Shown: one piece after another, positions 2,932 to 24,844 of the stretch
How the letters are laid out: every line of letters begins with the position of its first letter
Position numbering within the stretch: the first letter of the stretch is position 1
NCBI RefSeq assembly: GCF_000400465.1
Contig: NW_008806275.1
Span: 60,001 to 92,000 of the forward strand
Length of the DNA: 32,000 nt
Origin: Wallemia ichthyophaga EXF-994
Taxonomy: Eukaryota; Fungi; Basidiomycota
Direction of reading: 5' to 3'
Program-made: the position numbers and the translations under genes
Notes under the pieces: generated by a model
What the model was told of the DNA's origin: nothing
Databases searched by the model: none
The model's input: only the letters and a program-made list of their open reading frames with translations

Positions 2932-4145
2932 CTATGCTTTGTCTATCCGATTGAGAAAATCTTTGACCAATTCATAAGTATAGAAAGATACTCCAATACT
3001 CGGCGCCACTGCATTTGTCAATTTATACACTCGAATCGTTTATCACTGTGACCCACCTAGATTTTATTAGCAGATGTAGGAAGATTTTCAGCTCATCTCA
3101 AACACACACCTTTCATCCAATTGGCAACTATACCTCTATATAAGCCCTTGACACTGTTTTTGAGAGTAATTAGGCATGCTTTATCGCAAAATACCCCACT
3201 CACCCCTCTGATTTGACAATATGTCTCACAGCATCGATCGATCCGTCGTATTTGAGTCCGAATATACCATTAACTTGCATCTTCCGTCTGAGGACGTCGC
3301 AGGGGTATCTGAAGAAGAAAGACGAGTGAGCATGTCTATGCGCAAGCTCACACCCTAACCCACGTGATTGTCTGAGATATCGTTCCAGAAACGGCGCCAA
3401 TAAGTAGCGTCATACAGCGATTACTTTCTACAGGCACATAAGGCTTGAGTGCTTCGTATATAGCGAATGAGCAGCCGACATAAGGAGCGATACCGGCACA
3501 TGACACCACTGAGCCACGATAGAGTGCTCTAATACCACCCTCTTCATAGTAGACCTTCTTTCCCATGCCCAAAATGCCTAATTGAGCATCACGGCGCGAT
3601 GATTCGAGACCGAGACTGGCAGTTGCGATCGATAGTCTCGAGCGGACGAGATCTAGTGGGTATGTAGCAGTAACTGATGCACAGCCTGCTATTGCACCTG
3701 CTGATAATCTCTCTAGATTACTCAGATGTGCGTCTTTCCTCCCGCCGCCGAGAAAGACCTTGACAACCTCGTATGTAGAGAATTGTATTCCTGAGTAGGG
3801 GAATATGCGCAGACAGTTGAGATAGTTGCCGCGGTAGAAGCCTTTGAAACCTTCTTCTGTGTACATCTTCAAAAGTGAGGGCCAGAATCGAGTGTACTCT
3901 GAATTCGACTGGACTTGTTGAAGTATCTTGAGCCTCTCCATTGGACTAACAGCTGTGCGGGAAGCTGCACCACTGATTCCACCTGCTAGCAACCACTCCA
4001 TGATCTTCCTCGACTGGAGATGCGTAGGGGTTGTCGTTGTGGTTTTGCTGGTGTTGTTGAGATTACTACTATTACTGCCACTATTTCCACCATTCAAATT
4101 ACCACTCTGTTCCCCGCTTTCCCCGCGTAGATCACTATAAGCCAT
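2932..4145 (-). CDS. Mitochondrial carrier (SLC25), YPR011C/Mrx21-SLC25A42-like, 335 aa; exons 4145-3364, 3308-3204, 3153-3110, 3008-2932
   Basis: Three Px[DE]xx[KR] repeats (PMERLK, PLDLVR, PCDVLR). LAGGISGAASRTAVSPMERLKILQQVQ and RGNYLNCLRIFPYSGIQF closely resemble yeast YPR011C. The C-terminal KVAPSIGVSFYTYE is restored by splicing. Confidence 0.9.
3009..3109 (-). other. Composite 101-nt intron = 53-nt intron (3109-3057) directly abutting a 48-nt intron (3056-3009)
   Basis: The minus strand reads GTGTGT...GCTAATAAAATCTAG|GTGGGT...ATTGACAAATGCAG. Each half has its own donor, branch motif and acceptor. The flanking exons join as AAA G|TG GCG (K-V-A) with no room for coding bases between the halves. 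Confidence 0.65.
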
Positions 4146-4232
4146 TCTCAATGATTGAACTAAAGATAGCAGATATATACCGAAAGAGCAACGAAATGTT
4201 TAAATTTTCAAATACAGTCTATGTTAATCACT

Positions 4233-5636
4233 TTATAGCATATTCCTCAAACTCGTTGTGAAAGCCTTTGGTGAGCCACCTGCCTCGGTAAACTTGGAAA
4301 GGAGCAATTCATCCGACATTGGATATGACAAGCCGAGAGTCTTGCCGAGAGATTCGAACACACCGACGGCTTCGGCGAAGGAGAGCTTGTTCATTTCTAC
4401 CAATTTGAGACCTTGGGAGTTATTGAGATGGTTTACGTTCCATTTGTGAAATGGATTAACTGGCTTCTGAGGCTGCAATCCAAGTTGAGCGAGGAGTAAA
4501 GGTGGTATCTGCATGCTTGTAGGAGTGCTGGAGGTTGCTGCGACTATAGCACCCTTGCTGAACTGCTGTCTACCACTAATCAATTCGAGAAGTTTTGCGG
4601 TTACGGATAGTTGGTAGGGTTGAAGCTTGTTGAAATGCTGGTCTCTGTATAAGGTGGGTTGATAGAGTGCTTGGAGTGAGTCAATGGCAAGGAGTGTTGG
4701 GTAGGTGGACTGCTTGTTGAGTTCTGCGAAGACACCTTCAAAAACTTCAACAGCGCTTTGTTCAGATTTTGATGGATGCATGCAGAGATTGTATAGACTG
4801 TCATCCTTTTTCACTTGAGCGTAATCCTGTGAGATTTTAACATTTACGAGCTTGTCCTTATTTGATTCAGCGAATGATCTGAGCAAAGAAGCTGAGAGTG
4901 CTGGCTGTGACCAGATAGAGTTGCTTTGAGAAGGAGGCAGATAGTCATAGCTGCTGTCGACCAAGTGTTGAGAGTTTGGTATGTAAATGACCAGATAACC
5001 CGATTGCTGGGCGTAGACGACAGACTGGAGGAGAGAGATGGATCTGCCGCTGCCAGCGTCACCGTGAAGAACGAGTCTGGTGTCTTTGCTGGGGCTATTG
5101 GCAGCCTTGTCCAGATAGTCGATAGATTTCAGTGTAGAAGCGCGAATAACGGCGTGTGGTTGTGTTTGAGCGTCGAACTCTCTAGCCAGGGTAGGTGGGA
5201 TACCCGTGTGCTTGATAAAGCTTAGATCGTTCTTTGTAAATTTCAAGGGAGAACCGAGTGAAGATTGAGTGAGGCGTTCTGGGAGGAAATCTGACATGAA
5301 TGAGAGGTCTGGCTGAGGACCCTGAAGCTTCTCGTAGCGGGCTGTATTGGTGTGTGTCTGTGCTGTTGTCAGCTGAGTATATATGAGATTCGAGGAAACA
5401 CACCTCAGTCTTCATTTTACCGCCGCCTTTATTCTTCTTAGTAAAGCTGTTAGACGCCTTTCTTGGGGCTAAAAGATGTAAGAGAGATGATCTAGCTGCA
5501 GTGCACTCCACTTACGCTGTGCCTTCTGGCCCTTCTTTGGTGGGAGATGTATTGAAGGCGTGCTGGTGAATTGCCTAACGCCTGTGAAGAGAGTATTCCT
5601 GGCTGATCTCTGTGCCATATGCGCCATCTGTGCCAT
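4233..5636 (-). CDS. RSM23: Mitochondrial small-subunit ribosomal protein mS29/DAP3, 436 aa; exons 5636-5516, 5468-5404, 5357-4233
   Basis: Presequence-like N-terminus (SARNTLFTGVRQFTSTP). P-loop region LVLHGDAGSGRSISLLQ, followed by GYLVIYIP and PTLLAIDSLQALYQPTLYRD typical of the DAP3 family. Introns of 47 and 46 nt. Confidence 0.85.
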
Positions 5637-8048: not shown

Positions 8049-8551
8049 TTCCTGGCTCGGTATCTGTTGTATTCTATCTGATGAGTGCAAGTGTGCGTGT
8101 GTGCGTGTTTTAGACGAGCCAGCGTCTGGAATAACTTAGCAGATGATTAGCGTTGGTGGCAGACTAACGAGGAATTACGCGTCAGCTTTACCGCCTTTCT
8201 CTCCTCAAAAACCCCCATTGTTTGGAGAACAATGAATTTTACGCAGGAACACAGGTACCACTGTACGCAAAGGTGTGTATATTTAAACGTCTGGAATCAG
8301 CCTGGAGAGGTTTTGGAGGGGTTGCTCGGGTGTATTGACTCGGTGTTGAGTGTCTCGCTTTTCGGCGCTTCTGCTAGGCACCAGTTTGCAGCGAGCCAGC
8401 CGAGCAAAGAGGACGGGACTATGCGGATAAATTTCTGCAACTATCAGGGCATACACGCAGCTACACAGCTATACAACTCATAGATAGAATAGTGCACCGA
8501 CGTCATCCCCTTCCTCTCGACAGCCATCTACTTGATTTTGAAATACAGAAA

Positions 8552-11745: not shown

Positions 11746-13989
11746 ATGAGAAGATCAGCGCGCAATCAAAGTGCAGTGGAATTAGAGACAGAAGCGCAGA
11801 GGCAGATGCAGGCTAACACGCCCAGTAAGAATAAGGTTGTGGACGTAAAGAAACCCAAGAAGCTAGCAGCGACTGATTCTATCGTCAAACTAAAGGGCAG
11901 CTCAGATGATGAGACTGAGAATAAGCCAGCGGTAACGCCTAGAAGATCGAGGAGAAACTCGGAGCGTCCGCAAGAGAGGCCCAGCTCATCTAGTTTGGAG
12001 TTTAGAAACACCCCATCTAAAAGTACACCAAGGAGAGCGACACCAATCAGAGCAACACCACCGTCGTCCACATCCAAACCAGCTGCACTAGCAACCAAAG
12101 CAACCAAAGCAACCAAAGCAACTCCCGTCAGGTCGATAACACGCACAAGCACACCCGTATCAGCGGATAGGGCTAAAGCGCGCGCACAGATGGCAGAAGA
12201 TGCTGAAGGCGAGCCTAGTAGTAGCAGTAGTAGCAGTAGTAGCAGTAGTGACGAAGAGCGCCATGCTTCTGATTACAGCAAGAGCGACAGCGGAGAAGAG
12301 GATGAGATAGAGGCGGACAAGAGCGACGACGATGACGTGCATGTCGACGTGAAGGATGAGATTCTCTCAAGTGATGACGACACAGACACGCGCAAGAGAA
12401 GACGCGGCGGCGTGAGTGCGACACCGCGCAAAAACAAAAGCAGGATAATGGGAAATATTACTCCATCTGCTAAGCGTAACCTGCAGCAGAGAAGAGCTGC
12501 CAATTCGTGGGTGTGAATCAAGTCAGCCAGTGTCTATCTAACCCCAGCCATAACTTCAGAGTAAGACCACTTCCTGCACCAGCTATTGAAAGCTTGAACG
12601 ATACCACAGACAGAGATGCTGTATCTCTGTCACGCGCTTTGCTCCACGTAGGAGCTACTCCAGGATACCTCCCTTGTCGCGAAGATGAGTATTTGATGAT
12701 TGAAGGGTGCATTGAGAGTCTACTTGAAGATGGACAGGGTGGATGTGTTTGTGAGTGGCTAGCTACTTCCTCTACAAGGCTTACACGCTCAGATATCTCT
12801 GGTACACCAGGCACTGGTAAAACAGCCACGGTACATTCAGTCATTAGAGGGCTGATAGACCGTTCAAATAACCAGGTGCGGTTGGTTTTAGCGTCTTATT
12901 CTTCTAACAATCACGTGCAGGAAATATCGCCATTCAAATATGTCGAAATTAACGGGCTCAGAGTCTCAGAACCGGCACGCGCGTATCCTATTCTTTGGGA
13001 AGGTCTCACCAACGACGCGATGAGTCTCTCTCCCAGAGCTGCTTTGAACGCTCTCGAGAGGTATTATGGCGAGGGTCAGAATGACCAAGCATGTGTCCTG
13101 CTTATGGACGAGCTTGATCAAATGGTTACAAGCAAGCAGAGTGAGGTTTATAACTTTTTCAATTGGCCCAATATGCCGCGTTCGAAGCTTATCGTTGTCG
13201 CTGTCGCCAACACCATGGACCTTCCTGAGCGTGTTTTACGCGGTAAAGTTAAGAGTAGATTGGGTGAGTTATATGTGTGTTTTATCTGACACTATGCTTA
13301 ACTCTATTTCTTTCTAAGGTATGGAACGCATCAACTTCGCTCCTTACGACCGTATGCAGTTGATAGAAATAGTGCAATCGCGTTTGCGCTACGCGATTAG
13401 TTTGGCCGAACAACGCGACTACTCGCTTCTCACAGACGAAGACACACGAGGGCTATTTGACGAGGACGCAGTAAAGATAGCAGCTGCGAAAACGGCTTCT
13501 GTGCAGGGCGACGCTCGACGGATGCTGGAAGTGTGCAGACAGACGCTCGAACGAGCGGCTTTACTGCCCGTCAAAACCAGCAACGTTCAACAGACGCTTA
13601 AAGCAATGTCACTCAGCCCTCTCAGTCGGATGATGGCCAATCTGAGTCTGTCTGCGAAGATCATGCTCGTATGCGCGATGCGATGCGCTGCTGCAGCTGG
13701 AATGGGAACGGGGGAGTGTAGGTGGGGCGATGTGTCAAGTTTGCACCAGAAACTCTCCTCACAGTTGGTGTCATACACACCGGTCATCCCGCTCAGTAGG
13801 ACTGATCAGTATCAAGTACTATCCAACCTCGCCGCTACCAGAATCGTGCTTGCTCACGAACCTGGTGCTCCAAACTATGGCCTCAATAAGGGAAGCGATG
13901 CCGAGAGAATGATTATTTTGAATGTTCCTGAGGCTGACGTGAGGAGAGTGCTGGGTGAGGATACTAGATTTCATTCTGTATTGGGATGA
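11746..13989 (+). CDS. ORC1: Origin recognition complex subunit 1, 682 aa; exons 11746-12506, 12560-12750, 12793-12875, 12921-13263, 13319-13989
   Basis: AAA+ motifs YISGTPGTGKTATV, LLMDELDQMV, YNFFNWP, VANTMDLPERVL and SRLG are characteristic of Orc1. Introns of 53, 42, 45 and 55 nt keep the frame. Confidence 0.9.
12091..12248 (+). repeat. Coding microsatellites in ORC1 (GCAACCAAA x3 = ATK repeats; AGTAGC/AGTAGT poly-Ser)
   Basis: Directly visible: GCAACCAAA x3 at 12091-12117 and an AGT/AGC run at about 12217-12248. Confidence 0.8.
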
Positions 13990-14198: not shown

Positions 14199-17100
14199 AT
14201 GGGAGACTTCCATAAGATCCACCGATATTTCAGTCCGCTACTATCAATACTCGCAGATAGCAGCGTCGAAGATCTCCTCGGACGGTCTAATTCGATCTCC
14301 ACGCTATCAGATCTCTTGCGTCCATTCGACGTATTGCATAATGTACCTCTGCGGACGAGTCTCTTGGAAACGCACCACGCACCCTCCTTCTATCTACGCT
14401 TCAATGAGCTCGCTCAGCTTGATGCCGACGCCGATGAGTTGCACAGCGTCGTAGAGAACGCAGCAAATGATGCATTGGATGTACACGGTGCACAGAATCC
14501 ACTCAATCAGTATGATCATTTCGTAGACGCAGTTCTCTCCCACCACGACCTCCTCCCGTACTCCACCTTCCATCATCCGGCAGCATTTATCCTCGCAACG
14601 ACCACGACACACAGCGATCCCATAGCACAGCTCGCTCGACTCGCTCAGCAGGTGTCGCTGCCAGATGCCTATGCCAAGCGCACATACATGAACGCGACGC
14701 CCAACTATGTCCTCCGATACTACGTCCTCATACACGATTCACAGGATGGCAGTATTAGTATGGATGGCGCGCGTGAGCTGCTGGAGAAGGCTAAGAGGGC
14801 ACATGGGATTCACTGTGCTATGCTAATTATCAACTCTAAGGACAAAGCAGGCGTACATACCAATGACGATCTCGTTGCTCGCACGTACGGAAACGCTAGC
14901 GGTCACAGTCTCGACGCTTCAGATCTCACCGTCGTGAGGGCGTTCGTCAGGGAGCTTGTCGTCCAATCACTCATACCATGGATGGAAAAATGCACTCGTG
15001 ACTGGAACCAGCTGGTAAGTTGGTTCTTGGTGGCTTTTAAAACTTGCTAAATAAGCTCCAACCCAGTTCGTTGCAAATAGGAAGGGATTCGCTAATAAGC
15101 TGTTCTCTTCCTTTGGCGTTTCGAGGAAGTGGACTGCGCAGCAATCACCCGCTAGAGCTATCAACAGCGCTGCTTCGCCAGGATCGTTTATCAGCTCAGA
15201 GAAGATGTAAGTGGTGTGTTTGTGTGAAGCTGTAGCATAAGCGTTACGTCGACATTCTCATATTAACATTCACACTCCAAGATACCCATCAACTACCCAC
15301 GAAGCTACCTTCCGCAGACTGGCAGACTTTGCTTTCATGTTACGTGACTACAAGCTCTCAGCTCAGGTATACAGTCAGACGCGGCGAGATGTGGCCGAGG
15401 AGCCCGAAGCATATCACTACGCAGCCTCTGCTAACGAGATGCTGGGGCTATCGCATCTTCTCTCTCCGCACTCTCCAACGTCGACACTCGACCTCACACT
15501 GGAGCACCTCAAAGAAGCTTCGCGCGTGTGGGGTGAGACGGGAGAACGTAATGACAGCGCGCAGGCTGTGCGTGCTACGATACTATTCGTCGAGTCATTC
15601 AGAGCGCGCGGATCATCTGGTCTAGTCATACCTGCAGCACTCATCGGTGCGGCCAGCGGAGGTGCTGTGCACCACGCCATAATGCTCAGTGAGGCTGCAT
15701 TGGCGTATGAAAACCACGTTAGACCTTACAAGCGCAAGGCGTGTCTCTACTATGCCAGGGCAGCATCTTTATACGAAGCCAATGGGAAATTGGAACATGC
15801 TAGATGGTGCTACTCTCACTGCGATACTAGAAAATTCCCCTTTGTCGTGCAAGCTCTAGGTAGGCTAGCTAGTGAGTCCAACAAGCAGGAGGCTGCTAAT
15901 CTTTTCACTGAGGCACTGCGCTATGATGGTGATGAAGCGCTGCTAGATAATTGGAGACTGAGTGTTAAAGAAGAGGGCGTTGATGTGAAATCCCTATCAC
16001 TCCCATTCCCTTTTTTCGATAAGTCAGCGACTGTTATCTACGACCAAAGTCAGAATTCCACCACGAGCAGGAGATCGGAGGCTATTTTCAGCAGCCTTGA
16101 GCAAACGCTGGATGTAGATAGCAGCAAGCCTGATGCAAGTGTCGACGTAGACGCAGGAGAAACCTTCCACGTCCAAATATTCCCCCGCAACCCTTTCCAT
16201 GGCGGCATAACTTTGAGCGACCTGGAGCTCAACTTCGATGGCGATGGGAGGGTGGATGTGGAGCGACTCGACAATTTGGTGGAACTGGCTGCCATGCAAG
16301 CCCTTCCGCTTACCTTCAAATGCAGTATACCCACCCCATCTGCCGTTAAACTCAGCAGCGTTTCCTTCACACTGGACGGGCTTGCGAGGTTTACAGAGTC
16401 ATTGACGAGGAATGGACGGAGACTGAACGATACCAAAGAGCAGCGCATCGGCAGATTCTATGCGCCCGACTTATCACTACAGGTTAGAGCCCACGAAGCG
16501 TCCCCGAAGCTGTCGGCGAGCTTAGTGGGTGTCCCGCAGCGCATGGGTTTGGGCGAGGGGCGTTTAGCTCACCTCGTCCTCAACAACACCGGGCTATTGG
16601 ATGTGGACGATATTCGAGTGGCGGTTAATGAGCAGTCCTTTGTTGTGCTCGGTGTGGATGGCGGGATAGATAGTGCGCTCGATTTTTACAAACAGCAAAA
16701 AGGTGCGAGTAATGAGAAGTGTCGTGTCGAGAACAACTTGCTGCCCACTCAGCCGTTGGCCCTCCATGAGAGTATCAGAAGCGGGGAGAAGATGTCCATT
16801 CCCGTGCTCGTCAGAGGCGATGGCGTGGGCAAGCGAGCACTCCATCTACTTATCACGTACAAGCAGAAGGTGTGTTTTGTTTAGTTGCACTTACTCAGCT
16901 AACTCAGGATAGGATCGCACTTTACAACCTAGCACATCACAGCATGAAAGATCGCAGCGCACTTGGCACTCTCAACACAGCGTCAAAAGATTGCTGCACA
17001 TAGTCGATATTCGACCAGTGGTGGATGTGAAACTCGCCGCACATCCAAGCAAGGCGCCAGTCGGCGGCTACGAGCTTTCGCTTGAGATAGAGAATGTGGT

Positions 17101-19260: not shown

Positions 19261-22200
19261 ATGGAACCACCTAAGATTACGATAGAGACGAGTCCCAATT
19301 CGCCCCAACCGAGCTACACAAACGACCGCAGAAACTCCGAGTCGCTGGCTGTCCCCACCACCTCCAAAGACCCTTTTACAGACGATAATGCTAGCACAAG
19401 CTATAGCACTCCCAGCGCACCCAGTACACCCCCAAAGAAGAAGAAGAAGGAGAAAAAGGAGAAGAAACCACTCGAGCCACGCCGCGTCGATAACCTCGGC
19501 GCCTTCGCCTTCCAGCCACACATCCTCACTGACTGCGTCGGCTACAAACAGTTTGACACTCTGCGCGACGATATCGGCGGCATTGATGGTCTTGCTCGTG
19601 GCCTAGGAACTGATCTTCGCGATGGTCTCCGTGCCGAGGCCTATTCCCTCAGTGGCAAGCCAGACCCCAGTGGTCCTCCCCAGGGAAGAGCGGGTTCCGC
19701 CAGCGAAGCCAGCGGCTTAGAAAGGCAGCGTGTGTACGACAAGAACGAGATTCCACCGAAAGAAACCAAGAACTTTTTCCAGCTTATGTGGATGGCTATG
19801 GAAGACAAGCTGCTGCAACTCCTCATAGTAGCTGCGATTGTCGCCCTAGCTTTGGGTATATATCAGGCTGTGGATTTCCCCGCACCCGTTATCAGATGCT
19901 ACAATGACGCAACGGGGAGATATGACGCATACTGCACAGAACCACAAGTCGAGTGGGTCGAGGGTGTCGCCATCCTCATCGCCATCATAATCGTCGTCCT
20001 CGTCGGCAGTATTAATGACTATCAAAAGGAGCTACAGTTCATGCAACTAAACAAGAAGAAGGAAGACAGAGATGTGAAAGTTAAAAGAGATGGCAATGAA
20101 CAGCACATAAGCATCAAGGATGTCCTCGTCGGCGACATACTGCAGCTCGAAACAGGCGACATCTTGCCTGTCGATGGCGTCTTTATCGGAGGTCACAACA
20201 TCAAGGCAGACGAGTCTGCAGCGACTGGTGAATCTGATGCCATTAAGAAGGTCACCTTTGACGATTATGCATCGTATCTTGACACCCTCAGCGAACACGA
20301 CAAAACTAAGAGTCAAAAGAAGGATTGCTTCTTGCTATCCGGTTCCAAGATTACCGAGGGCGTGGGTGAAATGATCGTCGTTGCCGTCGGTCTGCAATCC
20401 TACAACGGTCGTATCCTTGCCAGTCTAAATGACGAAGATGACGAAGGCACTCCCCTTCAAAGCAAACTGAACGACTTGGCAGAGTTGATTGCAAAGGTGG
20501 CTTCTGTTGCTGGTTTGCTCCTCTTCATCGCCCTCATGATAAGATTCTTCGTGGGATTGAAAGAGAATCCAGACAGAACCCCGCGCGAGAAGGGTCAGAA
20601 TTTCATTGAGATTCTCATCATATCGGTCACTCTCATTGTCGTTGCGGTCCCTGAAGGACTTCCGCTCGCTGTCACTCTAGCTCTCGCTTTTGCCACCAAG
20701 CGTATGACCAAGGCCAACCTTCTCGTCCGCCTTCTTGCTTCTTGTGAGACAATGGCGAATGCAACTGCTGTATGTACAGACAAGACTGGAACGCGTGGGT
20801 ATAGCCTTCTTGAGCATGTTTAACACCTCCTAATATGTCACAGTTACGCAGAATGTGATGAGCGTCGTCGCTGGCACCATTGGAATCAATGCTAAGTTCG
20901 TCATACGGCTTGAAGAAAACGCAGCAAGGTCAAATGCAGACCAACTGAATAGCGATGAAAAGTACACTGGCGGAAACTTTACTGTTGACTCCAATGATCT
21001 ATCCAATCACATCAAGGGTCCACTCCGCAAGCTGTTGTTTGACAGTATAGCGATCAACTCTACAGCTTTCGAAGACAAGAACAAGGAGACTGGTGAAATT
21101 GAATTTGTCGGCTCAAAGACCGAAACCGCACTCTTGCGCTTCGCTAAAGAGCGTCAATGGGATGACTGGCGGAACGCCCGTGAATCAGCCGAGATAGCGC
21201 AAATGATACCCTTCTCATCCGCACGCAAAGCTATGGGTATGGTTGTGAAGCTCAGCGACGGTCACTACAGGTTATACGTGAAGGGTGCATCAGAGGTGCT
21301 TGCAGGGCTTGCAACCAAGAGTGTTTCAATTGATGAAACTGATTCTGAAGATATACCAGTGTTTGATATGTCCCAGGCTGACCGTGAGAGCTTGAACGAA
21401 ACCATCAAGTTCTATGCAACGCAGTCGTTGCGCACTATAGCCTTATGCTATAAAGACTTCGCTGAGTGGCCACCGAAGAAGGCATCAATTGACGAGACTG
21501 GAGATGTTGAATATGATAGCATTGCGACGGACTTGACATTGGTCGGCATTACTGGTATAGAAGACCCTCTTAGACCTGGTGTATCTGACGCCGTAAAGAG
21601 AGCTCAAATGGCCGGCGTTAAAGTAAAGATGTGTACTGGTGACAATGTACTGACTGCGCAATCTATCGCTAGACAATGTGGGATCCTGACCGAAGGTGGT
21701 ATCGTTATGGAAGGAGTCGAATTCAGAAATCTCAGTGAATACGACAGAATAAGTTGTGTTCCGAATCTGCAGGTTCTTGCTAGATCATCTCCCGATGACA
21801 AGAAGATGCTAGTTCAGACGCTCAGAAAGTCTCATTCGGAGACTGTCGGTGTCACTGGTGATGGTACAAACGATGCACCTGCCTTGAAGGCTGCCAATGT
21901 CGGTTTTTCAATGGGTATCGCTGGTACTGAGGTAGCCAAGGAGGCCTCCTCGATCATTCTCATGGATGATAATGTGGGTGGATTAACTTTAAATGTGCTC
22001 TTGCAACCCACTTACACCTTTCTAGTTCGCTTCAATTGTCTCAGCTATAATGTGGGGCAGGTGTGTGAACGACTCGGTAAAGAAGTTCTTGCAATTCCAG
22101 CTCTCAGTCAATGTGACAGCAATTCTCATTGTCTTTGTCACGGCAATTGCATCAGATTCGGAAGAGTCTGTCTTGTCGGCTGTTCAGCTGCTTTGGGTGA

Positions 22201-23216
22201 ACTTGATAATGGACACATTCGCCGCATTAGCGCTGGCCACTGACCCTGCAACACCAACAGTACTCAACCGCAAACCAGAAATACCAGGCTCACCAATCAT
22301 CAATGCGAGTATGTTGAAGGTAATCACATCTCAATCGCTGTACAAAACGGCAGTTGTATTTGTCTTGCACTTTGCAGGTAGACAGATACTTGGTTATAGA
22401 ACGAGTTACACTACGGATGAAGAAGCAGCAGAATTCAGCGCACAAGGCACTCAATTGAAATCATTAGTATTTAACGCATTTGTCTGGTGTCAGATTTTCA
22501 ACCAAATCAACTGCCGTAGATTGGACAACAAGCTGAATGTGTTTGAGGGTATTCACAAGAATTGGTGGTTTATCGTTATGTTCTGCATCATGGTCGGTGG
22601 ACAAGTCTTGATTATCTTTGTTGGTGGCGCTGCATTCTCCGTCACAAGATTAGGTGGAAGAGATTGGGCGATATCTGTTATTTGTGGATTCTGCTCTCTT
22701 ATCATTGGAGCTCTTTTCAGATTTATACCGGATGAACCCATCGAAAGAAAGCTGACGCAGTGGGGTATGTTCCCCGACCCACATCGACTGCCAATCAATA
22801 TGGGTGAACCATCAAAGAAAGGAGAGGATCCAATATACGATTCACTTCAGCTGCTGTCGATGCTGCGTGGTGGGCGTATCAGAGGTTCATCAGTTGTGCA
22901 GAAATCAAGACGTATTGTCAGACATCCAATCCAAGAACTATCCGAAACACTCTACCCACATTCCAAAACCAATAGCGGGACAACGACGCCAGATAATGGT
23001 AGCACATCACCTTTGTCAGCGAAGCACACACATCTCGATGCTTTGTCGGTTTTGCCGATGATGGTGGCTTCGAGTGTGGGTGCAGGACCGATATACAGAA
23101 ACACGAGATCAGGAAGTGTGAATTCAAATTCGAACTCAAGACCGGGTCACTCTCCGTCTACGTCGATTGATGATCACAGCAGCGCACCTCCATCGCCCTT
23201 GTCGCATAAACGGTGA
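19261..23216 (+). CDS. PMC1: P2B-type (PMCA-like) vacuolar Ca2+-ATPase, 1284 aa; exons 19261-20794, 20844-21973, 22026-23216
   Basis: DESAATGESD, VAVPEGLPLAVTLALAF, phosphorylation site DKTGTLT (restored across a 49-nt intron), KGASE, TGDGTNDAPAL and QLLWVNLIMDTFAALALATDP. Confidence 0.96.
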
Positions 23217-23328
23217 GAGTGACGCCCGCGCCAACGACAAGAACAACGATAACGATAACGAGTAATTTATTTAATGTAAATGTATTATTTTGCTTATGAT
23301 AATATCATGTTTAATCAAGCGTACAACG

Positions 23329-24844
23329 ATGACCTCAATTAAGAGCAGACAGGATGAGCGAATGCCGCGGAGCTGGGAGCAGTACGCGTCGATCAGCATG
23401 GATGAAGGGAGCTGTGAGTGGGGTTGTTCTGTGGAATATAAGGTACTCAAAGTGCTCTAGATGAATCTGGATTGAGTAACTTTGAGAATATCCGTTGTCC
23501 AGGATATTTGCCATCGGAGTAGGTTTCCAGTTTTTGATTATTCGCACTCTCAGACGTCACACAGAAACTACATACAGCAATTTGTATACATTTCACTGGT
23601 CCCGACGGTGAGAAAGAGCGGTGATTCGAACAGCGGCGTGGGGACGAGAGGGAGAAGTAAGAAGCAGCAGCAACCACACATAAATACAAACACAAACACA
23701 CGCCATGACACCGTCGATGTTGCCGCGTTTGACGAGAAGATGGCGAGTAGCTCACTGCGTCTACTTACAAGACTGCTTGAGATGCAATCTGGCAGTGTGT
23801 TTGAAGACAGCGGGAAAGACCATCTCGAAATTATTCTCAACGCTTTGCCAAGTTACCGGCGGACAATGTCCGTTGCACACAAGCATGCACCCGATACAGT
23901 CCTCGAGAAGGGCGCTGCGGAGGTAAACAAGTGTAGGTGTATATGGGATCTGCTCGGCATGAACAGCAGGAATAAGAGTGAGAGGAAGAATGACATCAAT
24001 AATAATGCGGCAGAAGAGAATGTCCATATCGGCGTGAACGGGAATGTGAATTTGAACTTAGATGGCATCATTGATCAGGATGCATGGGCATTTTTCGGAT
24101 TCGTTGTGAGTGTTTGGGAAATGCAGGCGAGAAATAGTCAGCCTACCCACCTCATGGCGAATCTGCGCGATGTCCGATATGACGCTAGCTCGGCACTAGA
24201 TGCGGTTCTGGCGGGTTTCGAAGCCCCGACGAAGCTCTCCCCGCTGAGCTGCTCGCCAAGCGTAGGCATCAGGGTACGCGAAAATCACCACGAGCTGCTC
24301 GCTGCCAAGATGGCATCTGAGAGTATCCAGCGGGTGGATATTTCAAAGCGGCTGCTGAGATTGGTAGGTGGTGATGTAATGTATGATACTGCGTGAGTCG
24401 CTCACACTCTCCTGCAATAGCTTCTCCAGCTCGTCGTTGATGGCACTCTTGCCGCTTCTGCCGTGCTGACTCACCTTGGTAGCCAGTTGTCACTCAGGGA
24501 AGGCGACGTGGTGTGTGATGTAATGGACGTGCGTATTGGATTTAATTCAGTGGTGCTCCCGCTCACACTTCGGCTTTCTGTCACAGGCATTTCCCGTTGA
24601 GTACACAGATATCATGCTCGATGTCATGGTCGCTGTGATACAGGCTAAAGGGGAGCTAGTTACACAGGGGCAGACACCTATTATGAAAGTACTGCTGTCG
24701 TCAGAAAGCTCCACCTTGAAAGCTATTGGATTGAGAAATGCCATCATCGGCAAGAGTCCATCGGTTGATTCGGTGAGAGAAAGTAGAGAGGAGCTAGAGG
24801 GGCATTGCGGAAAGGCTGTGAATGTTCTTCTTGCACTTCTGTAA
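23329..24844 (+). CDS. Uncharacterised helical protein, possibly Smc5/6 subunit Nse5-like, about 435 aa; exons 23329-23413, 23461-23518, 23565-24363, 24421-24528, 24587-24844
   Basis: Four canonical introns (47, 46, 57, 58 nt) link the ORF-track fragments into one frame, so the gene itself is well supported. The Nse5 resemblance (YLPS..YI, SLRLLTRLL, CIWDLL, W.FF..V...WE) is from memory and weak. Confidence 0.7.

What the first reader, a model, noticed from the sequence alone, without database searches (positions are those of the whole stretch)
3009..3109. Two complete introns back-to-back with a zero-length exon (recursive-type splicing of a 101-nt intron)
The only intron of about twice the normal length in the window splits precisely into a 53-nt unit (GTGTGT, branch GCTAAT, TAG) and a 48-nt unit (GTGGGT, branch ATTGAC, CAG) joined at TAG|GTGGGT. 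GTGGGT is among the most frequent donors in this window, and both halves sit in the modal size range. The conserved carrier motif K-V-A-P leaves no room for a coding micro-exon. Removing only one half gives a premature TGA in either order. Recursive splicing is established for very long animal introns and nested stwintrons are described in ascomycetes. An abutting pair of ~50-nt introns would be a distinct two-step mechanism in a length-constrained spliceosome (inference).
Basis: partly seen in the sequence, partly recalled or inferred. Interest (0 to 1): 0.8.

Follow-up and report, generated by a model that had tools for sequence, protein, structure and literature searches.

The report
Two abutting short introns, Wallemia carrier
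The last intron of a mitochondrial-carrier gene of the salt-loving fungus Wallemia ichthyophaga is built from two complete ~50-base introns joined end to end; a sister species keeps the joint, so it is probably removed in two cuts, a route already known in other fungi, and every public gene model seen here gets it wrong.

Summary
Observation confirmed. On the minus strand, a mitochondrial-carrier gene (CDS 4145-2932) has a 101-nt phase-1 intron (3109-3009). It divides exactly into a 53-nt unit (GTGTGT…CTAAT…TAG) and a 48-nt unit (GTGGGT…TTGAC…CAG), joined TAG|GTGGGT. Removing either unit alone hits a TGA.

The window is Wallemia ichthyophaga. An unnamed sister species (L001) has the same design, 55+43 nt, with TAG|GTGGGT and a CTAAC branch site in each unit. 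Yet 4-fold sites are near saturation (41.7% identical) and other intron interiors no longer align. W. hederae and the W. mellicola group, which branch outside this pair, have one 50-59-nt intron at this site, homologous to the 5' unit. The doubled intron is therefore derived, and its internal splice-site pair looks maintained by selection. The chance of such a joint in a random 101-nt intron is about 0.002, or 0.0005 with a branch site.

Most likely these are two functional abutting introns (a zero-length exon) removed in two reactions. No RNA data could be reached, so the pathway is inferred.

This is not a new mechanism. Zero-length-exon recursive splicing is documented in Cryptococcus neoformans, S. 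pombe and Candida/Debaryomyces, so this is a new, unusually small member of a known kind. The W. ichthyophaga models I read remove only the 5' unit and truncate the protein (…NWMKGGSQ*).

The parts
3110..3153 (-). Exon 3 of the mitochondrial-carrier gene (…VKGLYRGIVANWMK + first base G of the Val codon)
   Evidence: CDS assembly and translation. Orthologous exon in L001, W. hederae and W. mellicola.
3057..3109 (-). 5' intron unit, 53 nt: donor GTGTGT (3109-3104), conserved interior CTGAAAATCTT (3091-3081), branch-like CTAAT (3070-3066, A at 3067), acceptor TAG (3059-3057). Orthologous to the single intron of the Wallemia species that branch outside this pair.
   Evidence: Interior is similar to the L001 5' unit (z=4.7) and to the W. 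mellicola single intron (z=3.0, p=0.002). The ab initio reference annotation treats it as a stand-alone intron.
3009..3056 (-). 3' intron unit, 48 nt: donor GTGGGT (3056-3051), branch-like TTGAC (3021-3017, A at 3018), acceptor CAG (3011-3009). Lineage-specific addition shared with L001.
   Evidence: Interior is not alignable to the L001 3' unit (z=-0.2), while donor, branch site and acceptor are kept. Absent from W. hederae, W. mellicola and L008.
3055..3059 (-). Zero-length-exon joint TAG|GT (3' splice site of unit 1 abutting the 5' splice site of unit 2). After unit 1 is removed the donor context becomes AAG|GTGGGT.
   Evidence: Sequence. Identical TAG|GTGGGT in L001 at 8256-8264. Invariant in 6 further W. 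ichthyophaga assemblies.
2932..3008 (-). Last exon: (V)APSIGVSFYTYELVKDFLNRIDKA + TAG. It supplies the last ~20 positions of the third carrier-repeat profile (inferred to be the final transmembrane helix). Missing from all the public W. ichthyophaga protein models I read.
   Evidence: Pfam coverage 8-94/96 with it against 8-74/96 without. 95.7% amino-acid identity to L001. Present in W. mellicola XP_006956181.1. Public models end NWMKGGSQ.
3154..3203 (-). Intron 2 of the same gene (50 nt, GTGAGT…CTAAT…CAG), an ordinary single intron used as a yardstick
   Evidence: Interior not alignable to the L001 ortholog (z=1.15).
3309..3363 (-). Intron 1 of the same gene (55 nt, GTGGGT…CTCAC…CAG), an ordinary single intron used as a yardstick
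   Evidence: Interior not alignable to the L001 ortholog (z=-0.28).
3364..4145 (-). Exon 1 of the carrier gene (ATG at 4145)
   Evidence: Its ORF is on record in Logan assemblies of the same species.

Best explanation
The 101-nt intervening sequence is a tandem pair of complete U2-type introns separated by a zero-length exon, in the last intron position of a mitochondrial-carrier gene of Wallemia ichthyophaga.

Shown: the ancestral state is one ~50-59-nt intron at this phase-1 site, as in W. hederae and the W. mellicola group. In the common ancestor of W. ichthyophaga and an unnamed sister species (L001), a second intron-sized unit with its own GTGGGT donor, branch site and YAG acceptor came to lie directly after the old acceptor. 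All six splice signals have been kept since then, while the neutral sequence around them has been randomised.

Inferred: in a fungus that recognises introns across ~50 nt (intron definition), the first donor pairs with the nearest good branch site (CTAAT; CTAAC in L001) and the first AG after it. The 5' unit is therefore cut out first, probably during transcription. This ligates exon 3 to GTGGGT and recreates a donor (AAG|GTGGGT). A second reaction then removes the 3' unit, giving ...NWMK-VAPS.... The opposite order, or a direct one-step 3110^3008 splice, would give the same mRNA and may occur in a minority of transcripts. A transcript that stops after one step carries a premature TGA.

Inferred, undecided: the second unit arose either by tandem duplication of the ancestral intron, with breakpoints at the AG|G…AG| boundaries and the downstream copy free to diverge, or by insertion of a new unit.
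For: 1. Exact anatomy, with every signal within the range of the window's 19 confident introns: donors GTGTGT 2/19 and GTGGGT 6/19; branch-to-AG distances 10 and 9 nt; unit sizes 53 and 48 against a median of 52.
2. Low chance expectation: 0.002, or 0.0005 with a branch site.
3. L001 has 55+43 nt with TAG|GTGGGT and a perfect CTAAC in each unit, and each acceptor is the first AG after its branch site.
4. Neutral divergence between the two species is close to saturation. Four-fold sites are 41.7% identical. Orthologous introns 1 and 2 and the 3' unit interiors are not alignable (z=-0.28, 1.15, -0.2), yet the internal joint and both branch sites persist.
5. A rooted tree gives ((W. ichthyophaga, L001), W. 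hederae), W. mellicola with 100% bootstrap. The two outer species and L008 have a single 59-, 50- and 50-nt intron, so the double state is derived.
6. The 5' unit aligns end to end with the W. mellicola single intron (z about 3) and the 3' unit does not.
7. The last exon is under coding constraint and completes the third carrier repeat, so both units must be removed.
8. Self-trained GeneMark-ES independently called the 53-nt unit an intron.
9. There is no stable RNA fold that could shorten a one-piece intron (z=+1.65 and +0.5).
10. The W. mellicola ortholog is annotated with two introns about 15 nt apart, so closely spaced introns are plausibly handled in this genus.
11. The same mechanism is demonstrated experimentally in another basidiomycete and in yeasts.
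Against: - There is no transcript evidence of any kind: no junction reads, no lariats, no intermediates.
- Conservation rests on a single sister lineage.
- The TAG and GTGGGT lie next to a 5' unit whose whole interior is unusually conserved for an unknown reason, so part of the joint's conservation could belong to that block rather than to splicing.
- Within-species polymorphism is uninformative: 5 variable sites, none in a signal, expected by chance about 20% of the time (my calculation).
- Introns of about 75 nt exist in the window, and the species' mean intron length (61-68 nt) implies that longer one-piece introns are tolerated. One-step removal cannot be excluded.
- The 314-aa product of the half-spliced RNA is on record only as the genome annotation, on one contig, not on any assembled transcript. 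This is weak negative evidence.
Confidence: 0.65

Rival explanations
1. It is one ordinary 101-nt intron removed in a single step (donor 3109, branch near 3018, acceptor 3009). The internal AG|GTGGGT and the upstream branch motif are incidental by-products of a ~50-nt insertion and are not used.
For: Longer-than-modal introns exist: about 75 nt at 15207-15281, and a genome mean of 61-68 nt. The final mRNA is the same on either route, so nothing in the coding sequence demands two steps.
Against: A strong branch site followed by its first AG at optimal distance from the donor would act as a decoy giving a premature stop unless re-spliced. Selection should remove it, but it is retained, and in L001 it is a perfect CTAAC. 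The chance of the joint is 0.002-0.0005 per intron, and it is seen in two species across near-saturated divergence.
Confidence: 0.15
2. The internal sites are used mainly for regulation. Splicing to the internal TAG without re-splicing gives a transcript with a premature stop (…KGGSQ*) that is degraded or encodes a truncated carrier, which tunes expression. The productive mRNA comes from one-step or two-step removal depending on conditions.
For: Either half-spliced form has a premature TGA in W. ichthyophaga. Intron retention and alternative 3' sites are the main alternative-splicing classes reported for this species, affecting 15% of genes, half of them salinity-specific. The unexplained conservation of the 5' unit interior could be a regulatory splicing element.
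Against: In L001, retention of the 43-nt unit causes a frameshift with no stop inside the unit, so a stop inside the retained unit is not conserved (my reading of the sequence). There is no expression data. The truncated protein lacks the end of the third carrier repeat and is unlikely to function.
Confidence: 0.12
3. It is a stwintron-like nested intron. An internal intron 3107-3057 (GTGTGT…TAG, 51 nt) sits inside the donor of an external intron, whose donor GT|GTGG is formed only after the internal intron is excised. The runs of GT at the 5' end allow this reading.
For: The 5' end reads GTGTGTGT, so alternative donors at 3107 and 3105 exist. Stwintrons are well documented in fungi.
Against: It is not needed, because both units are complete and functional-looking in the primary transcript. 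L001 starts GTATGTGT, where the shifted parse gives the same 3' unit anyway. The regenerated donor GTGTGG would be weaker than the intact GTGGGT. The defining feature of a stwintron, an interrupted signal, is absent.
Confidence: 0.04
4. The public annotation is right. The gene ends inside the 3' unit (…NWMKGGSQ*) and the downstream 'last exon' is not part of the mRNA.
For: This is the model in GenBank for EXF-994 and in the two population-strain models I read.
Against: Those models come from an ab initio predictor and were then propagated as protein evidence, not derived from transcripts. The last exon is 95.7% identical in protein to L001 while silent sites are saturated. It is present in the W. 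mellicola and Agaricomycete orthologs. It completes the Pfam repeat.
Confidence: 0.03

Closest known systems
Zero-length-exon recursive splicing in fungi: C. neoformans BOT1 intron (bioRxiv 10.1101/224170), S. pombe SPNCRNA.445 intron (bioRxiv 10.1101/226894), Candida/Debaryomyces snoRNA host transcripts (PMC5033589)
   Same: A 3' splice site lies directly against a 5' splice site inside what is annotated as one intron, and each part has its own branch site. The host is a fungus that uses intron definition. The BOT1 case is also in a basidiomycete protein-coding gene. The S. pombe site is likewise conserved in sister species.
   Different: Those introns are long for their genomes (375 nt = 210+165; 336 nt), or each part carries a snoRNA. 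Here the whole is 101 nt and each part sits at the genome's modal intron size with no embedded RNA (Rfam negative). Those cases have direct spliceosome-profiling or RT-PCR evidence and this one has none. Here the evolutionary birth is visible, with a single intron in the species that branch outside this pair.
Animal recursive splicing at ratchet points / RS sites (Drosophila Ubx and about 200 others; vertebrate long genes)
   Same: A juxtaposed YAG|GTRAGT regenerates a 5' splice site after the first ligation. The intron is removed stepwise and the final mRNA carries no trace.
   Different: The animal cases subdivide introns of tens to hundreds of kilobases, and in vertebrates they rely on exon definition through an RS-exon. 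Here the intron is 101 nt and no such exon-definition step is plausible.
Stwintrons (spliceosomal twin introns) of ascomycetes (PMC6616335, PMC7138796, PMC9024468)
   Same: A complex intervening sequence made of two U2 intron units at one intron position in a fungal gene, removed by consecutive reactions. The Lipomyces case can be excised either in one step or in two. Origin by new splice sites or duplication within an existing intron has been proposed.
   Different: In a stwintron the internal intron interrupts the donor, branch site or acceptor of the external one, so the order is obligatory. Here neither unit interrupts a signal of the other, and either order or one step is formally possible.
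Closely spaced introns flanking micro-exons in intron-definition fungi
   Same: In the W. mellicola ortholog of this very gene, the annotation places a 45-nt and a 53-nt intron around a micro-exon of about 15 nt. This suggests that the Wallemia spliceosome can handle near-adjacent short introns.
   Different: There a coding micro-exon remains. Here the exon length is zero, so the second donor's upstream context is created only by the first ligation, or vice versa.

Membership tests
Zero-length-exon (recursive) intron pair | 3' splice site immediately abutting a 5' splice site inside the intervening sequence | tested here: met
   TAG|GTGGGT at 3059-3051, and the same in L001.
Zero-length-exon (recursive) intron pair | Each part has its own plausible branch site, and the acceptor is the first AG downstream of it | tested here: met
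   CTAAT is 10 nt before TAG and TTGAC is 9 nt before CAG. L001 has CTAAC in both units. The motifs lie within the range of the 19 window introns.
Zero-length-exon (recursive) intron pair | A functional donor is regenerated or retained after the first ligation | tested here: met
   By sequence only: exon 3 ends AAAG, giving AAG|GTGGGT. GTGGGT is the commonest donor in the window, 6/19.
Zero-length-exon (recursive) intron pair | Splicing intermediates: junction reads to the internal site, two lariats | not testable with these tools
   No RNA-seq could be queried. The metagenome scan found only distant cDNA-like relatives.
Zero-length-exon (recursive) intron pair | Conservation of the internal site in related species | tested here: met
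   Kept in L001 at 41.7% four-fold-site identity, with other intron interiors unalignable. This rests on only one sister lineage. The species that branch outside this pair have a single short intron.
Zero-length-exon (recursive) intron pair | The host intron is unusually long for its genome (the usual rationale for recursion) | tested here: inconclusive
   At 101 nt it is about twice the window median of 52 and the longest intron I could confirm in the window. It is tiny in absolute terms next to 336-375 nt in other fungi.
Stwintron | The internal intron interrupts the donor, branch site or acceptor of the external intron, so the external one is functional only after the internal one is excised | tested here: not met
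   Both units carry intact GT…branch…AG in the primary sequence. A shifted [D2,3]-like parse is possible but unnecessary.
Introner-like / repeated intron element | Multiple sequence-similar copies in other genes of the same genome | tested here: inconclusive
   blastn-short of both units against roughly 110 kb of Wallemia DNA (the window plus loci L001-L009, some of them overlapping copies of the same region) found only chance 8-13-nt matches apart from the self and ortholog hits. The whole genome was not searchable.
Mitochondrial carrier (SLC25, PF00153), the host gene | Three tandem ~100-aa repeats, each a full PF00153 match | tested here: met
   Three stretches, 240.7 bits. The third repeat is complete only if both units are removed.

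The most novel reading that the evidence does not exclude
An intron can multiply in place. In a genome whose spliceosome is tuned to ~50-nt introns, a tandem duplication of a whole intron, or the insertion of an intron-sized unit at an existing splice junction, is neutral from the outset, because the product is two self-sufficient introns around a zero-length exon. Selection then preserves the internal AG|GT. Such abutting pairs would be a previously unrecognised route of intron birth, since a later small insertion at the joint would create a micro-exon and two separate introns. They would also be a systematic source of truncated gene models in compact fungal genomes.
Probability: 0.25. Interest if true: 0.65.

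Novelty: new member of a known kind. Interest (0 to 1): 0.45.

Why it matters
- It would be the smallest zero-length-exon intron pair among the cases I found: 101 nt, with each part at the modal intron size. If confirmed, recursive splicing would not be only a device for very long introns.
- The single-to-double transition is caught between sister lineages. This gives a clean natural experiment on how new intron units arise next to old ones, and on how strongly intron length is policed in intron-definition fungi.
- There is a practical consequence. The reference W. ichthyophaga protein (J056_001991 / XP_009266130.1) and the two population-strain models I read end at …NWMKGGSQ, lacking the end of the third carrier repeat. 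The W. hederae model skips the last exon and fuses four genes. Ab initio predictors trained on ~50-nt introns will make the same error wherever introns abut.

Tried and rejected
- A home-made dynamic-programming gene finder with codon log-odds chained unrelated genes and mis-set introns, for example 20770-20851 in place of the true 20795-20843 that restores DKTGTLT. I dropped it in favour of a strict open-frame-plus-signal filter and hand checks.
- The first protein search returned no Wallemia hits, only Agaricomycetes at 53-55%. I reached relatives through the neighbouring mS29/DAP3 gene and cluster lists instead.
- The metagenome scan gave only 42-47% cDNA-like relatives.
- A cluster look-up for more species of the L001 lineage gave only a spurious 53-aa fragment.
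- Repeat or Introner origin: no other copies were found.
- An RNA hairpin that could shorten the intron: none, and the sequence folds less well than shuffles.
- An intronic snoRNA or other known RNA: no Rfam match at E<=1.
- Similarity between the two units, as a trace of duplication: not significant (z=-0.7 and 0.8). This is expected at saturation, so it does not decide the origin.
- A regex scan for further abutting pairs in the window and related loci: the other hits were coding sequence followed by one intron.
- Apparent long introns at 7172-6966, 13796-13967, 23213-23343 and 23414-23553 were rejected as antisense ORFs or gene boundaries.
- Coprinopsis has its nearest intron 6 nt upstream, in the Leu codon of L-K-V, so the position is not strictly shared with Agaricomycetes.

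Full report
**What is there.** The finding lies on the minus strand in a four-exon gene for a mitochondrial carrier. The exons are 4145-3364, 3308-3204, 3153-3110 and 3008-2932, giving 335 aa with three PF00153 repeats. Introns 1 and 2 are 55 and 50 nt. The third is 101 nt (3109-3009), in phase 1 of the Val codon of …NWMK|VAPS….

It divides with no base left over into two units.
- The 5' unit, 3109-3057, is 53 nt: GTGTGT, CTAAT at 3070-3066, then TAG.
- The 3' unit, 3056-3009, is 48 nt: GTGGGT, TTGAC at 3021-3017, then CAG.

In each unit the acceptor is the first AG after the branch-like motif, 10 and 9 nt downstream. Removing only one unit gives a TGA within a few codons, either way.

**Is it more than chance?** I could confirm 19 introns in the window by open-frame logic plus splice signals. 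They are 43-75 nt long with a median of 52. Their donors are GTGGGT (6), GTAAGT (5), GTGAGT (5), GTGTGT (2) and GTAAGC (1). Other apparent long introns dissolved into antisense ORFs or gene boundaries, so the 101-nt intron is the longest real one I found.

I simulated 100,000 Markov-chain introns of the same length and composition with the true ends fixed. A central [CTA]AG|GT[AG]NGT occurred in 0.2%, and together with a well-placed branch motif in 0.05%. A pattern scan of the window and related loci found no second genuine case.

**Whose genome, and what do relatives show?** The ATP-citrate lyase exon is 96% identical to that of Wallemia mellicola. Exact look-ups of the window's ORFs place them in a cluster of W. 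ichthyophaga proteins. I fetched syntenic loci through the adjacent mS29/DAP3 gene. The orthologous intron position compares as follows.

| Source | Intron at this site |
|---|---|
| W. ichthyophaga (window, L006 and five NCBI strains) | 101 nt = 53+48 |
| Unnamed closer relative, L001 (Logan SRR25399871; carrier 90.6% aa identity over the aligned conserved part) | 98 nt = 55 (GTATGT…CACTAAC…GATAG) + 43 (GTGGGT…GCTAAC…CCAG) |
| W. hederae | one intron, 59 nt |
| W. mellicola CBS 633.66 | one intron, 50 nt |
| L008 (DAP3 in the same 90%-identity cluster as W. mellicola) | one intron, 50 nt |

A neighbour-joining tree of the carrier, rooted with five Agaricomycetes, gives ((W. ichthyophaga, L001), W. 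hederae), W. mellicola with 100% bootstrap at each node. The doubled state is therefore derived, by one gain in the ichthyophaga/L001 ancestor.

**Evidence for selection on the joint.** Between W. ichthyophaga and L001, four-fold degenerate sites are only 41.7% identical. The interiors of orthologous introns 1 and 2 are no more alike than shuffles (z=-0.28 and 1.15). The interior of the 3' unit is equally randomised (z=-0.2). Yet TAG|GTGGGT, both acceptors and a branch site in each unit are all retained, and in L001 both branch sites are the perfect CTAAC.

An unused strong branch site plus AG at the ideal distance from the donor would be a harmful decoy, so its retention argues that it is used. 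The unit lengths differ between the species by non-multiples of three, which excludes any coding role. Within W. ichthyophaga three haplotypes differ at five intron positions, none in a signal. That is compatible with constraint but not significant; by my own arithmetic, about 20% of such sets would miss every signal by chance.

**Which part is old?** The interior of the 5' unit is significantly similar to the L001 5' unit (z=4.7) and to the single intron of W. mellicola (z about 3, p=0.002-0.008). The 3' unit resembles nothing (alignment A1). The simplest reading is that the 5' unit is the ancestral intron and the 3' unit is the addition.

A tandem duplication of the whole intron would produce exactly this structure at birth, with breakpoints at the shared AG before each boundary. 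Insertion of an unrelated unit would also fit. The two units are no longer similar to each other (z=-0.7 and 0.8), which is expected at this divergence, so the origin stays open. Neither unit has other copies in the DNA I could search.

**How it most likely works (inferred).** Fungi with ~50-nt introns recognise introns across the intron. The first donor should pair with the nearest good branch site and its first AG, so the 53-nt unit is excised first. This joins exon 3 to GTGGGT (AAG|GTGGGT). A second reaction removes the 48-nt unit. The reverse order, or a one-step 3110^3008 splice, would yield the same mRNA.

No stable fold brings the outer sites together (z=+1.65 and +0.5), and no known RNA is embedded. 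The W. mellicola ortholog is annotated with six introns of about 45-53 nt, two of them only about 15 nt apart, so near-adjacent introns are plausibly handled in this genus. None of this replaces RNA evidence, which I could not obtain.

**Annotation consequence.** The reference protein J056_001991 / XP_009266130.1 (314 aa) and the two MAKER population-strain models I read (742-743 aa, fused to mS29) end …NWMKGGSQ. They remove only the 5' unit and stop inside the 3' unit.

The reference genes were called ab initio with GeneMark-ES, and the later strains used that proteome as evidence, so this is a propagated error and not transcript evidence. The last exon is 95.7% identical in protein to L001. 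It is present in W. mellicola XP_006956181.1. It extends the third carrier repeat from profile position 74 to 94 of 96. The W. hederae model skips the last exon and fuses four genes.

**Comparison with what is known.** Abutting introns removed through a zero-length exon are established in several systems.
- Drosophila and vertebrates, in very long introns.
- C. neoformans BOT1, 375 nt split into 210+165, shown with junctions and branches.
- S. pombe SPNCRNA.445, 336 nt, with the site conserved in sister species.
- Candida/Debaryomyces snoRNA host transcripts.

The stwintron literature lists 'abutting U2 introns excised by recursive splicing' as one class of complex intervening sequence, distinct from stwintrons. 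The present case fails the stwintron definition, because no signal is interrupted. It meets all the sequence-level criteria for a zero-length-exon pair. Its distinctive points are its size, with each part a modal-length intron and the whole only 101 nt, and the visible evolutionary transition from one intron to two.

**Verdict.** It is a new member of a known kind, of moderate interest.

Noticed in passing
window 3081-3091 (minus strand; within 3060-3103): The interior of the 5' unit, especially CTGAAAATCTT, is conserved across Wallemia (TGAAAWWYTT in W. hederae, W. mellicola, L008 and L001), although neighbouring introns are saturated. It could be a regulatory element of the downstream RRM gene, whose ATG is only about 160 nt after the carrier stop, or an intronic splicing element.
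   Followed up: partly
window 2932-5411 (minus); proteins P0262, P0264, P0268, P0245: Public gene models here are wrong in several ways. The W. ichthyophaga carrier is truncated at …NWMKGGSQ. MAKER models fuse mS29/DAP3 with the carrier (742-743 aa). The W. hederae model TIA93655.1 fuses DAP3, carrier, RRM protein and a MAP-kinase-kinase into 1245 aa.
   Followed up: yes
L004 3001-4303 (W. mellicola CBS 633.66 ortholog): The W. mellicola carrier gene has six introns of about 45-53 nt, against three intron positions in W. ichthyophaga and L001. They include a micro-exon of about 15 nt (…IERLK…) between a 45-nt and a 53-nt intron, so intron number changes quickly within the genus.
   Followed up: partly
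window 12507-12559 (+): An intron with GTGGGT donor and CTAAC branch site has two in-frame acceptors 12 nt apart (…CCCCAG at 12547 and …CTTCAG at 12559). Which one is used, or whether both are, is unknown.
   Followed up: no
window 16870-16957 (+), Trs85-like gene: The acceptor choice is ambiguous. In-frame AGs at 16912, 16942 and 16957 would give introns of 43, 73 or 88 nt, and CTAAC lies before the first. An 88-nt one-piece intron here would bear on the length-limit idea.
   Followed up: no
L019 1810-1871 (Coprinopsis cinerea ortholog): The nearest Agaricomycete intron lies 6 nt upstream of the Wallemia position, in phase 1 of the Leu codon in L-K-V-A-P. This means either an independent origin or a shifted intron.
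   Followed up: partly
L014-L018 compared with window 3009-3109: Within W. ichthyophaga the 101-nt intron carries 5 variable sites across three haplotypes. One of them turns CCTAC into CTTAC, an extra branch-like motif upstream of CTAAT. In the most divergent haplotype, 4 of its 8-10 differences across the 1,030 nt compared fall inside the intron.
   Followed up: partly
window 20795-20843 (+), P-type ATPase gene: A 49-nt GTGGGT intron splits the catalytic DKTGT|LT motif. A naive predictor places the donor 25 nt too early (GTATGT at 20770) and deletes the phosphorylation-site motif.
   Followed up: yes
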